A stretch of DNA of 58,782 nucleotides, the filler included, from Bipalium vagum (Eukaryota), in assembly GCA_037834085.1 (NCBI GenBank). It is 3 parts of 3 records of this genome, joined end to end, with 100 filler letters (N's around TTAATTAATTAA, not from the genome) between each part and the next. Parts side by side here need not be neighbours in the genome. Positions count along the whole stretch, not along the records: positions 15,734 to 42,614 come from JBBMKC010122031.1; 2 more parts are not named here. One strand, written 5' to 3'. Below the pieces are notes generated by a model that did not search any database, was not told the DNA's origin, and saw nothing but the letters and a program-made list of their open reading frames with translations. The position numbers were made by a program, and so were the translations under genes. Of this stretch, positions 16,628-19,600 are shown piece after piece (positions within the stretch are counted from its first letter, which is position 1; each line of letters begins with the position of its first letter).

Positions 16628-19600
16628 TCAATTGGGTTCATTTTCGACTGGTGATTGGGTATTTTCGTTTTCAACAGGAACCTTTTCGGATTCTAAGTCC
16701 ACTTGTGGTTTTGTATTTTCAACCCAATCATCTTCATGTAATTGTTGAACCTCTGGTGTCTTTTGGATATCGGGGGTTTCCGGAATCTCTTGTATTTTTT
16801 GTGAAGTACTTTGTTTTTGTGATGTACTTTGTTTTTGAGATGTATTTTGTTTTTGAGATGTACTTTGTTTTTGAGATGTACCACCAATAAATTCTTCCTC
16901 ACCTAATGCAACTTCTTCATAGTCTCTAACAATGCTGTCGAGATTGTCTCTAGCCTCATTAAACTCTCCTTCTTCCATACCCTCTCCAACAAACCAATGG
17001 ACAAATGATCTCTTAGCAAATAACAGATCAAATTTAGAGTTAAGTTTTTGCCACATTTGACAAACGGAAGTTGTGTTACATAACATTGTTACACTTCGAC
17101 TTGTTTGTGCCAAGGAAGAATTAGGGACAGTTGTTGGAGGAAAACTATTTATACCGACCTTAAATCCAGTTGGACACCAATCCACAAACTGAATATCATT
17201 ACGTCTTTTTATTTCAAAAATAGCTTGATTGACGTTCTTTGGATTAACACTACCTCTATATTGTAAGACACATGCCATGAACTTTCCAATTCCAAAATTT
17301 AATTTAATAAATTGTGAAGAAGGTGTAAAAATTGCTCTTGTGAGCTCTGTTTCATCAATTGTTTCATGTTCAATTCTGGTCTGGCATTGGACTGGAGCAT
17401 GATGGGAAATTGGAAAATGGATTCTAGGAAAAGGTATGAGGTTGGTGCATAATTGATCCAAATCAGAATTAAGACAATTTTCAAATCTCAGAGAAACGGT
17501 TATGCTACTGAGAACCTGAAAGACTAATTATTTAACTACAGGTAAAAAAAATTAAAATAATTCTGAGATAGACTAAACCGTTAAAAGAAAATTAGATTCT
17601 GAAAAAAAGTATTATTTGGATATTTTTCCATTTTACTTTTTATATTTCTATTTAATAATAAATTAAATTATATTTCATTTATTATATTTTTATTTAATTC
17701 TTGTGACAGAAAATTTGATTCTCGGAAATTAATATCAACTTTAGAGTATAGTTTTAAACAATTTCCCCTTGTTTCTAATTTGATTTATCATTCAAGGTTT
17801 ACCCTTTAAGACTGAAAACCTTCAATACATTTTAAACTCTAAAATTCTGAATAGTATGAGTATTAAATTTAAAACATTGAAAAAAGTTGATTTCTTATTT
17901 GTATTAATAATAATAAAAATGAACAATTCTAAAAAAATTAAAAAAAAAGAATTTAAAATGCATTTTTTTAATTAAACATGGAAGGAAACTGACAATAATA
18001 TAAGGTGTACAAGTTGAAAATGACGATTTTTTAAACGATAATCCCATTAATTAGTATAAATTAGTTGATATATTACATTTGTGAATATACTTATTTTCAC
18101 TCACTATAATTAAAAATATGCCTGAGATCATAAAAGTGTATAATGTCTAATCTTTGTCAACTAATGTCTTAATACTGGTTCGATCGATTCAAAAAAGAAA
18201 ACTTCAATGTTCACGAAATGAACGAAAAATGAATTTATTTTAAGAATCCAAAACTTCGAAAATCTTGATGTGACTCAAAGACATACCCAGGTCATCATCG
18301 ATAACAAAACGCAATATTCACAGTAAGAAAGCATTATTGTGCATATAGTGGGATAAGAAGGGTGTGTTATATAACGACCTCTTGAACCTGGTCAGACCGT
18401 TACTGATGATCGTTATCAACAGCAATTGCTTATGTTACGCGATGCATTGTAAAGAAAACGACCAGGATGGGCTAAAAGACACTGGAATGATAACGCTCAT
18501 TCCCATGTTTGAAAACAGGTTGCGGAAACGTTGGATAAATTCGGTTGGTATGTCTTACCCCACCAGTCGTATTTACCAGACATTGTTGCATCTGTTCAGA
18601 TTGATGGGTCATTCATTGTCTCTCCGAATAGCGCTTCAAAAACTTCAAGGATGCCAAATATTGAATTGATGAGTGGATCATATCGAAACACAAAGTTTTT
18701 TTGACGCTATTCATAAATTACCAGAAAAATAGGCCAAAGTTATAGATATAGATGGAAATTACTTGGATTAAAATTTTGTTTTGTTTTGATAAAATGATTA
18801 TTGCACTCTTAAAAAACCGTCATTCTCAATTTGTAAACCTAATAAATACAAGTTAAATTATATTTTTATACTGAGAATATTTCAATAAAATAAAATTATT
18901 TTACTGGCTATACTTTAATTCTGCCCCATATTTTTAATCACAAATTTATATCTTTTAAACAAAAAATGGTATGGGACTGAACTAAAGTATAGCCTTTTTT
19001 TTTAATCAAAATATGCGCGATAATGAAAATAAACTCAATTTTATAAGATACACTTATTCAAAAGAGTAATATAGAGATTGGGACACTTGTGATAAACATT
19101 TTATGACTCGAACTCTTTTCAACAAGCTTCAATAAAGTCAAGATAATATTGCTCAGCTGATATTTTACCCTTCAGATTGAGATTCTGATTCGAGATAATA
19201 AAAATAGTAAACACAGTCTCTTCACTGATTATGATCCATTTCATAAATGTGAGTTCGATTTTCTTTTCGTCAGTAACTTAATTCAGTTGATGTTTTTAAA
19301 AAAGGTATATATCCCTTCGGAACAATATGGATTATGAATCTTTTTAACTTGAACGGCGATTTTCAATTACTATTTTTTATTAATATACAAGTCAATTGAA
19401 AATACTATTAATATTGTAATGGAAATAATTAAATATATTAATGATTATTGTTTAAATAATCAGAACAGGGACTAAGGCATTGTTTTTGAAATATGTTTTT
19501 GTATTATGAAATCTCTTCTCGATAATACTGAACCGATTAACAATTATTAATTCATCACAGTTTTCTAAATCCGGGAGAAACTATATTATATATTACTGCC

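What the first reader, a model, noticed from the sequence alone, without database searches (positions are those of the whole stretch)
17453..17485. Intact alpha-tubulin gene with Gln at catalytic Glu254 and a rebuilt T7 loop: candidate natural GTPase-activation-deficient tubulin
Seen: the spliced protein reads [19 protein letters not shown] where canonical alpha-tubulin reads SLRF-DGALNVDLTE-FQTNL. Codon 17455-17453 is CAA (Q253, equivalent to E254). The Gly of the GxxNxD T7 motif is Asn, and T253 is Asp. The ORF, splice sites and nucleotide-binding motifs (GQAG, AANN, GGTGSG, DNE, NLN) are intact, so it does not look like a pseudogene. Established: alpha-E254 completes the beta-tubulin E-site across the longitudinal interface, and engineered E254 substitutions block or slow hydrolysis and give hyperstable GTP-lattice microtubules. 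Inference: this isotype may seed or stabilise non-dynamic microtubules (e.g. sperm axonemal or cortical arrays). Alternatively, the neighbouring Asp could partly substitute.
Basis: partly seen in the sequence, partly recalled or inferred. Interest (0 to 1): 0.82.

Follow-up and report, generated by a model that had tools for sequence, protein, structure and literature searches.

The report
Planarian alpha-tubulin lacking the catalytic glutamate
This is an intact, conserved alpha-tubulin gene, almost certainly from a planarian flatworm, that naturally carries the Glu254-to-Gln change known to stop GTP hydrolysis in engineered human tubulin; it belongs to a family of at least 16 such genes in this genome, so these animals may encode microtubule stability directly in their tubulin genes.

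Summary
A four-exon minus-strand gene (21164..16628) encodes an alpha-tubulin that aligns with solved alpha-tubulins over residues 2-441. Codon 17455-17453 is CAA (Gln) at the Glu254 position, and the T7 loop reads [11 protein letters not shown].

It is neither a sequencing error nor a pseudogene.
- Two probable orthologues from other samples (about 84% identical over the core) keep Gln and the same intron acceptor.
- Against one of them, non-synonymous divergence in the core is 0.085 per site while synonymous sites are saturated (0.77).

The genome holds at least 54 alpha-tubulin-like loci.
- 16 of them, plus 10 relatives from other species (including Schmidtea polychroa Q7Z1L8), have Gln254 in 26 of 26 rows. 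Both CAA and CAG are used, while neighbouring loop positions vary. Dugesia ryukyuensis A7M6D9 also has it.
- A second clade of 11 has Val, Ile or Ala there.
- All of these have long, non-canonical C-terminal tails.

Engineered human alpha-E254Q is hydrolysis-deficient and gives stable GTP microtubules (PMC11893814). Coccidian alpha3-tubulin is a published natural precedent, argued from sequence (PMC10056924).

Loss of GTPase activation is therefore well supported by sequence, but it is not tested biochemically and no expression data were obtainable. I rate it a new variant of a known kind, interest about 0.66.

The parts
21162..21164 (-). Exon 1: the ATG only, followed by a GT donor at 21161-21160
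   Evidence: An in-frame TAG lies directly upstream of exon 2, so the Met must be spliced on. The intron is 47 nt, which is not a multiple of 3.
20895..21114 (-). Exon 2: alpha-tubulin residues 2-75 plus the first base of codon 76. It carries GQAG; the K40 position is Ser.
   Evidence: Pfam Tubulin, 4.7e-12; aligns to PDB alpha residues 2-75.
20379..20851 (-). Exon 3: residues 76-233. It carries AANN, A-G-G-T-G-S-G, DNE and NLN, with S at position 183 and F at 224.
   Evidence: Pfam Tubulin, 1.8e-33; ungapped to PDB alpha 77-233.
17516..20378 (-). Intron 3 (2863 nt, gtaaat...tttcag). It holds an old dispersed repeat.
   Evidence: The segment 18250-18750 has at least 40 copies at 69-84% identity elsewhere in the genome. 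The acceptor position is shared by the orthologous contig L031.
16628..17515 (-). Exon 4: residues 234 to the end, including the TGA stop at 16630-16628
   Evidence: Pfam Tubulin_C, 5.7e-36; 2.8e-76 to alpha-1B, ungapped 234-441.
17438..17485 (-). T7 loop and start of H8 (alpha 244-259), rebuilt relative to canonical alpha-tubulin
17453..17455 (-). CAA = Gln at the catalytic Glu254 position
   Evidence: It is invariant in 26 of 26 clade members, and the 16 paralogues in this genome use CAA 10 times and CAG 6 times.
16631..16909 (-). Non-canonical 93-residue C-terminal tail after DYEEV, with 18 acidic and 8 basic residues and no terminal EEY
   Evidence: It evolves fast: pN is 0.44 against the orthologue, compared with 0.085 in the core.
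16796..16881 (-). 4.8 copies of an 18-nt tandem repeat that encodes the STSQKQ repeats in the tail
   Evidence: The repeats are absent from the orthologue's tail.

Best explanation
This is a functional, selectively maintained alpha-tubulin isotype of a planarian (dugesiid) genome. It belongs to an old, planarian-wide clade of divergent alpha-tubulins whose hallmark is an invariant Gln in place of the catalytic Glu254, together with Gln318, Leu398 and a long non-canonical C-terminal tail.

Shown here:
- the gene structure;
- the Gln codon;
- clade membership;
- conservation of Gln across paralogues and species;
- purifying selection on the core.

From established knowledge: alpha-Glu254 on the T7 loop/H8 inserts into the exchangeable GTP site of the beta-tubulin of the neighbouring dimer and activates hydrolysis. 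Human alpha-E254Q tubulin polymerises but does not hydrolyse GTP, and it gives stable, catastrophe-free microtubules that bind EB3 along their whole length.

Inferred: heterodimers containing this isotype still assemble, but leave the GTP of the dimer beneath them unhydrolysed. Microtubules built wholly or partly from it would then be intrinsically stable GTP-type lattices. The likely places are long-lived arrays such as sperm axonemes and cortical microtubules, or cilia.
For: - Alpha-tubulin identity and colinearity.
- Gln at position 254.
- 166 of 219 columns that are invariant in 12 canonical alpha-tubulins are kept.
- Probable orthologues P0003 and P0004 (84% identical over the 206-residue core; 84% and 80% in the search table) keep the same T7 loop. 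The genomic contig L031 keeps CAA and the same intron acceptor.
- Core pN is 0.085 against pS 0.77 (saturated). Tail pN is 0.44.
- Gln254 is invariant in 26 of 26 clade rows, while only 38 of 206 columns are invariant and positions 246, 247, 250, 253 and 256 vary.
- Both Gln codons are used.
- The Gln rows form one clade (SH-aLRT 95). With the T7 columns removed, the constrained one-clade tree is 28 log-likelihood units better than the free quick tree, with p-AU 0.89.
- Named members are S. polychroa Q7Z1L8 and D. ryukyuensis A7M6D9.
- Human E254Q is hydrolysis-deficient and stable (PMC11893814).
- Several tubulin alpha and beta homologues are among the most sexual-specific, testis-expressed transcripts in D. 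ryukyuensis (PMC6467871).
Against: - There is no RNA or protein evidence for this gene. The only run holding it is DNA contigs, probably the source of the assembly.
- No biochemistry exists for any planarian tubulin of this clade.
- The rest of the T7 loop is also changed (G246N, V250S, T253D, F255L), as are E183S, G142A and Y224F. Assembly competence and nucleotide binding therefore cannot be assumed from human E254Q.
- Asp at 253 could conceivably supply a carboxylate in this subfamily.
- The testis-expressed planarian tubulins in the literature were not matched to Gln254 genes.
Confidence: 0.6

Rival explanations
1. The isotype still supports GTP hydrolysis. Asp253, or another compensating change in the rebuilt T7 loop or in a co-evolved beta partner, would replace Glu254, so its microtubules are dynamic or only mildly slowed.
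For: The window gene and its two probable orthologues all have Asp at 253. The same 'shifted acidic residue' idea was raised for Toxoplasma alpha3-tubulin (PMC10056924).
Against: Across the Gln254 clade, position 253 is Asp in only 14 of 26 rows and otherwise Ser, Asn, Leu or other residues, while Gln254 is invariant. Selection therefore acts on Gln, not on a replacement carboxylate. In human tubulin, E254Q alone abolishes hydrolysis (PMC11893814).
Confidence: 0.15
2. The protein is functional but is not a lattice subunit. It would act as a non-polymerising or end-specific alpha-like tubulin, for example as a cap, a nucleation template or a beta-tubulin sequestering partner. The loss of Glu254 would then reflect release from the hydrolysis role rather than a way to stabilise lattices.
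For: - Divergence is high (about 55% identity to canonical alpha).
- The long, non-acidic tail lacks EEY, and K40 is lost.
- There are many more alpha-like loci (at least 54) than beta-like loci (about 14) in the genome.
Against: The most conserved longitudinal and lateral elements are retained, and the whole core is ungapped against lattice alpha-tubulin. These elements include TNL-P-PRIHF after the T7 loop, the [10 protein letters not shown] strand and the [13 protein letters not shown] helix. Purifying selection is strong across the core.
Confidence: 0.15
3. It is a decaying or neutrally drifting duplicate (pseudogene) in a genome with rampant tubulin duplication, and the Gln is a random hit.
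For: There is a large tubulin gene family with some broken copies (stops in C67505, C197870, C2420 and others). A repeat is inserted in a 2.9-kb intron. There is no RNA evidence.
Against: - The reading frame and all splice sites are intact.
- The orthologue in another species has an intact frame.
- Core pN is 0.085 with synonymous sites saturated.
- Gln is invariant across 26 diverged sequences, with both codons in use.
Confidence: 0.05
4. It is a sequencing or assembly error: a true GAA was read as CAA.
For: The two codons differ by one base, and raw reads could not be inspected.
Against: An independent contig from another sample has CAA at the same codon. Fifteen other paralogues in this genome and 10 relatives elsewhere have Gln. 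The surrounding loop is changed at six further positions.
Confidence: 0.01

Closest known systems
Divergent planarian alpha-tubulins Q7Z1L8 (Schmidtea polychroa, 489 aa) and A7M6D9 (Dugesia ryukyuensis, 534 aa)
   Same: They fall in the same clade in the tree. They share Gln at 254, Gln318, Leu398, long non-canonical tails and a core about 50-60% identical to the window gene. Paralogues of the window gene in this genome are 80% (L009) and 94% (L007) identical to them.
   Different: They belong to different paralogue subfamilies: the window gene groups with P0003 and P0004, not with either named protein. I recall, and could not check here, that the S. polychroa protein was published in 2003 as a divergent, testis-expressed alpha-tubulin. 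I found no statement in the searchable literature that these proteins lack the catalytic Glu.
Engineered human TUBA1B E254Q (also E254A and E254N), PDB 9F3B/9F3R
   Same: The substitution at the catalytic residue is identical. The engineered protein assembles, retains GTP in the lattice, shows no catastrophes and binds EB3 along its length (PMC11893814). 9f3b_A is among the sequence matches of exon 4.
   Different: The human mutant differs from wild type at one residue. The window protein differs from canonical alpha at 53 of 219 otherwise invariant positions, including six more in the T7 loop, and has a 93-residue tail.
Toxoplasma and other coccidian alpha3-tubulin
   Same: It is a natural alpha-tubulin isotype lacking Glu254 (replaced by His or Gln) and carrying an unusually long C-terminal tail. 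It was proposed from sequence to have reduced or absent GTPase-activating function and to serve long-lived microtubules (PMC10056924).
   Different: It arose independently in apicomplexans. It also lacks Asp251, whereas the window gene keeps Asp251. It is a single gene per genome, not a family of 16 or more.
Beta-tubulin (Lys254) and gamma-tubulin
   Same: These tubulin family members naturally lack an acidic residue at the equivalent position. This is why the GTP buried at the intradimer interface is not hydrolysed (established knowledge). The beta-like loci of this genome read D-L-R-K-L there.
   Different: The window protein is clearly alpha-type: about 55% identical to alpha against 28-33% to the beta-like loci of this genome.

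Membership tests
Alpha-tubulin (tubulin/FtsZ superfamily) | Tubulin GTPase domain plus Tubulin C-terminal domain | tested here: met
   Pfam PF00091 on exons 2 and 3 (4.7e-12, 1.8e-33) and PF03953 on exon 4 (5.7e-36), all above the gathering score.
Alpha-tubulin (tubulin/FtsZ superfamily) | Closer to alpha than to beta or gamma, and colinear with alpha, including the alpha-specific S9-S10 loop length | tested here: met
   The best PDB matches are all alpha chains, ungapped over 77-233 and 234-441. Identity is about 55% to alpha loci and 28-33% to the beta-like loci of this genome.
Alpha-tubulin (tubulin/FtsZ superfamily) | N-site GTP-binding motifs (GQAG, D69/E71, AANN, GGGTGSG, E183, N206, Y224, N228) | tested here: inconclusive
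   GQAG, D69/E71, AANN, DNE and NLN are kept. Three positions changed: G142A, E183S and Y224F. From memory, A-G-G-T-G-S-G still fits the PROSITE tubulin signature.
Alpha-tubulin (tubulin/FtsZ superfamily) | Catalytic Glu254 (with Asp251) on T7/H8, which activates hydrolysis in the adjacent beta-tubulin | tested here: not met
   Gln at 254; Asp251 is kept.
Alpha-tubulin (tubulin/FtsZ superfamily) | Short acidic C-terminal tail ending in Tyr or Phe, and Lys40 | tested here: not met
   The tail is 93 residues and ends ...ENEPN, whereas canonical loci here have 13-18 residues ending EEY. Position 40 aligns to Ser.
Planarian Gln254 divergent alpha-tubulin clade (typified by Q7Z1L8 and A7M6D9) | Groups with these proteins in a tree to the exclusion of canonical alpha-tubulins | tested here: met
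   A clade of 26 Gln rows has SH-aLRT 95. With the T7 columns removed, monophyly is not rejected and the constrained tree is better (p-AU 0.89). In that free quick tree, however, the base is unresolved.
Planarian Gln254 divergent alpha-tubulin clade (typified by Q7Z1L8 and A7M6D9) | Diagnostic residues Gln254, Gln318 and Leu398, and a tail of at least 40 residues | tested here: met
   All three residues are present in the window protein. Its tail is 93 residues, against a clade range of 40-177.
Hydrolysis-deficient (GTPase-activation-dead) alpha-tubulins | Microtubules assembled from it retain GTP at the exchangeable site and lack catastrophes | not testable with these tools
   Only the sequence determinant (E254Q) is shown here. 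The biochemical consequence is known for human E254Q (PMC11893814).

The most novel reading that the evidence does not exclude
Planarians have evolved and kept, since before Dugesia and Schmidtea diverged, a large family of alpha-tubulins that are natural hydrolysis-dead building blocks. One genome holds at least 16 Gln254 genes and at least 11 with Val, Ile or Ala at 254. Microtubule stability in particular cell types would then be set by which alpha-tubulin gene is expressed, rather than by associated proteins or modifications. This would be a natural counterpart of the engineered E254Q/E254N 'mosaic' GTP lattices.
Probability: 0.4. Interest if true: 0.85.

Novelty: new variant of a known kind. 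Interest (0 to 1): 0.66.

Why it matters
GTP hydrolysis triggered by alpha-Glu254 is the basis of dynamic instability, and the residue is treated as universally conserved. All 107 canonical hits inspected here have it. Laboratories build E254A, E254N and E254Q mutants to study the GTP cap.

Here the exact E254Q change is fixed and under selection in a whole clade of animal alpha-tubulins, in a tractable regeneration and RNAi model group. Three things follow.
- It offers natural material for studying how cells use hydrolysis-dead tubulin.
- It suggests that tubulin isotypes can hard-wire lattice stability.
- It provides a set of co-varying changes (T7 loop, Gln318, Leu398, long tails) that may show how such subunits are tolerated without poisoning dynamic arrays such as the spindle.

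Independent convergence with coccidian alpha3-tubulin (loss of Glu254 plus a long tail) strengthens the case that this is a recurring evolutionary solution.

Tried and rejected
- **Joined protein:** the spliced protein was never sent to any search tool. Full-length folding and complex prediction were therefore left out.
- **Sequencing runs:** The look-up of sequencing runs found one DNA-contig run, probably the assembly's own source, and no RNA run.
- **Read laying:** Read-level confirmation of CAA was therefore not obtained.
- **Trees:** the 'careful' tree without the T7 columns did not finish in two 300-s runs. I used the quick tree plus an AU test.
- **dN/dS:** no ratio could be given because synonymous sites are saturated. 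Only pN and pS are reported.
- **Literature:** searches for the 2003 S. polychroa paper, and for any report of natural Glu254 loss in flatworms, found nothing. The library lacks most subscription journals, so this is weak evidence of novelty.
- **Profile search:** the Gln-clade profile search was dominated by mis-predicted multi-copy tubulin fusions. It added only four new Gln254 proteins.
- **Intronic reading frames:** Pfam found nothing in them. The mariner-like look of two short motifs, recalled from memory, is unsupported.
- **Rejected explanations:** sequencing error and pseudogene; see the rival explanations.
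Full report
**1. What is in the sequence**

The finding lies in the last exon of a minus-strand gene. Reading the minus strand gives this model:
- ATG at 21164-21162, directly followed by a GT donor, then a 47-nt intron.
- Exon 2 at 21114-20895, then a 43-nt intron.
- Exon 3 at 20851-20379, then a 2863-nt intron (gtaaat...tttcag).
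- Exon 4 at 17515-16628, ending in TGA.

An in-frame TAG immediately upstream of exon 2 shows that the Met has to be spliced on. An intron right after the start codon is the usual arrangement in animal alpha-tubulin genes (my own knowledge).

Translations of the three coding pieces hit Pfam Tubulin and Tubulin_C above the gathering score. They align to solved alpha-tubulins at residues 2-75, 77-233 and 234-441, with a single one-residue deletion in the H1-S2 loop. The exon boundaries are therefore consistent with one colinear alpha-tubulin.

I did not search the joined protein anywhere. All searches were done exon by exon, by reference.

**2. The observation**

Exon 4 residue 1 corresponds to alpha residue 234, so residue 21, encoded by CAA at 17455-17453, is the Glu254 position. 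The T7 loop reads [11 protein letters not shown] where canonical alpha-tubulins read G-A-L-N-V-D-L-T-E-F-Q.

Among the 120 best hits of the big protein search, 107 had Glu in this register and 10 had Gln. The change is therefore not background variation.

The glycine-rich loop is A-G-G-T-G-S-G, and E183 is Ser and Y224 is Phe. Lys40 aligns to Ser.

**3. Not an error, not a pseudogene**

- **Orthologues.** Two proteins from other samples, P0003 and P0004, are 84% and 80% identical to exon 4 in the search table. Each is 84% identical over the 206-residue tubulin core. They carry the same loop, with Gln.
- **Independent contig.** The contig behind P0003 (L031, a Logan assembly of run SRR33002330) is genomic. 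It shows an intron acceptor at exactly the same position and CAA at the same codon.
- **Selection.** Over the 206-codon core, window against L031 gives pN 0.085 and pS 0.77. Synonymous sites are saturated while the protein is held. The aligned tail has pN 0.44.
- **Conserved columns.** 166 of 219 columns that are invariant in 12 canonical alpha-tubulins are unchanged, and most of the 53 differences are shared with relatives.

**4.

Searching the window's own genome (440 Mb in 272,664 contigs) with exon 4 gave 98 tubulin matches. I fetched 60 of them.

At least 54 loci have an uninterrupted alpha-type C-terminal half. Their residues at position 254 are:

| Residue at 254 | Loci |
|---|---|
| Glu | 23 |
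| Gln | 16 |
| Val | 7 |
| Ile | 4 |
| Asp | 2 |
| Ala | 1 |
| Thr | 1 |

So 29 of 54 lack an acidic residue there. Some near-identical canonical copies may be alleles split by the fragmented assembly, but the 16 Gln loci are all well diverged from one another.

In a maximum-likelihood tree the 16 Gln loci, plus 10 Gln proteins from other sources, form one clade (SH-aLRT 95). With the 18 T7-loop columns removed, the quick tree leaves the base unresolved and pulls one long branch away. However, the best tree with the Gln rows held together is 28 log-likelihood units better than the free quick tree, with p-AU 0.89. A single origin is therefore the best-supported reading.

Each subfamily contains both a locus of this genome and a sequence from another species. 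The duplications therefore predate those species splits, and Gln has been kept in every lineage since.

Within the clade only 38 of 206 columns are invariant. Gln254 is one of them (26 of 26), whereas positions 246, 247, 250, 253 and 256 around it vary. The 16 loci use CAA ten times and CAG six times. That is the signature of selection for Gln itself, not mere loss of constraint. Two other columns separate the clade from canonical alpha-tubulins: L318Q and M398L.

A second, separate clade of 11 loci has Val, Ile or Ala at 254.

**5. Tails**

| Group | Residues after DYEEV |
|---|---|
| Canonical loci | 13-18, acidic, ending EEY or EEF |
| Gln clade | 40-177 |
| Val/Ile/Ala loci | 44-547 (the outlier L054 has 6) |

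The window gene has 93 residues with 18 acidic and 8 basic, including 4.8 copies of an 18-nt repeat (16796-16881). The orthologue lacks that repeat.

**6. Whose genome**

Two named public proteins belong to the clade: Schmidtea polychroa Q7Z1L8 and Dugesia ryukyuensis A7M6D9. Paralogue L007 of this genome is 94% identical to the Dugesia protein, and L009 is 80% identical to the Schmidtea protein.

Other features fit a planarian as well: 27-30% G+C and 43-47-nt introns. The source is therefore most likely a dugesiid planarian closer to Dugesia than to Schmidtea.

**7. Mechanism**

It is established that alpha-Glu254 completes the beta-tubulin exchangeable site across the longitudinal interface. 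Human alpha-E254Q tubulin, made as 'the smallest possible modification', polymerises and keeps GTP throughout the lattice. It shows no catastrophes and binds EB3 along its length with a dissociation constant of about 8 nM (PMC11893814).

By inference, a heterodimer carrying this planarian isotype would leave the GTP of the dimer beneath it unhydrolysed and so stabilise the lattice.

Asp253 is present in only 14 of 26 clade members, although it is conserved in this particular subfamily.

A published natural precedent exists. Coccidian alpha3-tubulins lack Asp251 and Glu254 (replaced by Thr and by Gln or His) and have very long tails. They were proposed from sequence to serve non-dynamic microtubules (PMC10056924). 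The planarian clade is an independent and much larger case, and it keeps Asp251.

On tissue: several tubulin alpha and beta homologues are among the most sexual-specific, testis-expressed transcripts of D. ryukyuensis, and the paper states they are also testis-expressed in S. mediterranea (PMC6467871). I could not link those transcripts to Gln254 genes. My recollection that Q7Z1L8 was described as testis-expressed could not be checked.

**8. What remains open**

- I have no expression evidence for this gene.
- There is no biochemistry for any planarian tubulin of this clade.
- Additional changes (E183S, G142A, Y224F, and six further T7 positions) mean that assembly competence cannot simply be carried over from human E254Q.

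**9. Verdict**

I rate it a new variant of a known kind. My confidence is about 0.9 that it is a functional, selected gene of this clade. My confidence in the full mechanistic statement is about 0.6.

Noticed in passing
Genome G000: loci L023, L024, L027, L029, L032, L034, L035, L038, L039, L040, L045: A second, well-supported clade (SH-aLRT 97-99) of 11 alpha-tubulin-like genes has Val, Ile or Ala instead of Glu254. Their frames are open, so loss of the catalytic residue happened at least twice in this genome.
   Followed up: partly
Genome G000: L035 (open frame 928 aa), L033 (905 aa), L040 (809 aa), L042 (713 aa): Some alpha-tubulin-like genes continue in one open frame for 350-550 residues beyond the tubulin core. 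These C-terminal extensions are far longer than any tubulin tail I know of. The estimates assume there is no intron in the tail.
   Followed up: no
Genome G000 as a whole: There are at least 54 alpha-type loci but only about 14 beta-type loci (reading D-L-R-K-L at the T7 position) among the 98 tubulin matches. The strong alpha-to-beta asymmetry is unexplained.
   Followed up: no
window 18250-18750 (inside intron 3): This is a dispersed repeat with at least 40 copies (197 first-look candidates) at 69-84% identity elsewhere in the genome. Short motifs in its reading frames look mariner-like to me, but Pfam found nothing.
   Followed up: partly
window 30103-30981, minus strand: An open frame carries a C1 (phorbol ester/diacylglycerol-binding) domain (1.2e-14) followed by the start of a RhoGAP domain (4.1e-07). 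It is probably one exon of a chimaerin-like Rho GTPase-activating protein gene about 9 kb upstream of the tubulin gene.
   Followed up: partly
The tool itself says this is no evidence of anything. I left the stretch out of all later searches.
   Followed up: no
window 21162-21105 (protein N-terminus): The protein starts M-R-E-L rather than the canonical alpha M-R-E-C. From memory, this tetrapeptide is what the tubulin mRNA autoregulation machinery reads, so the isotype may escape or alter that control. The same point was made for Toxoplasma alpha3.
   Followed up: no
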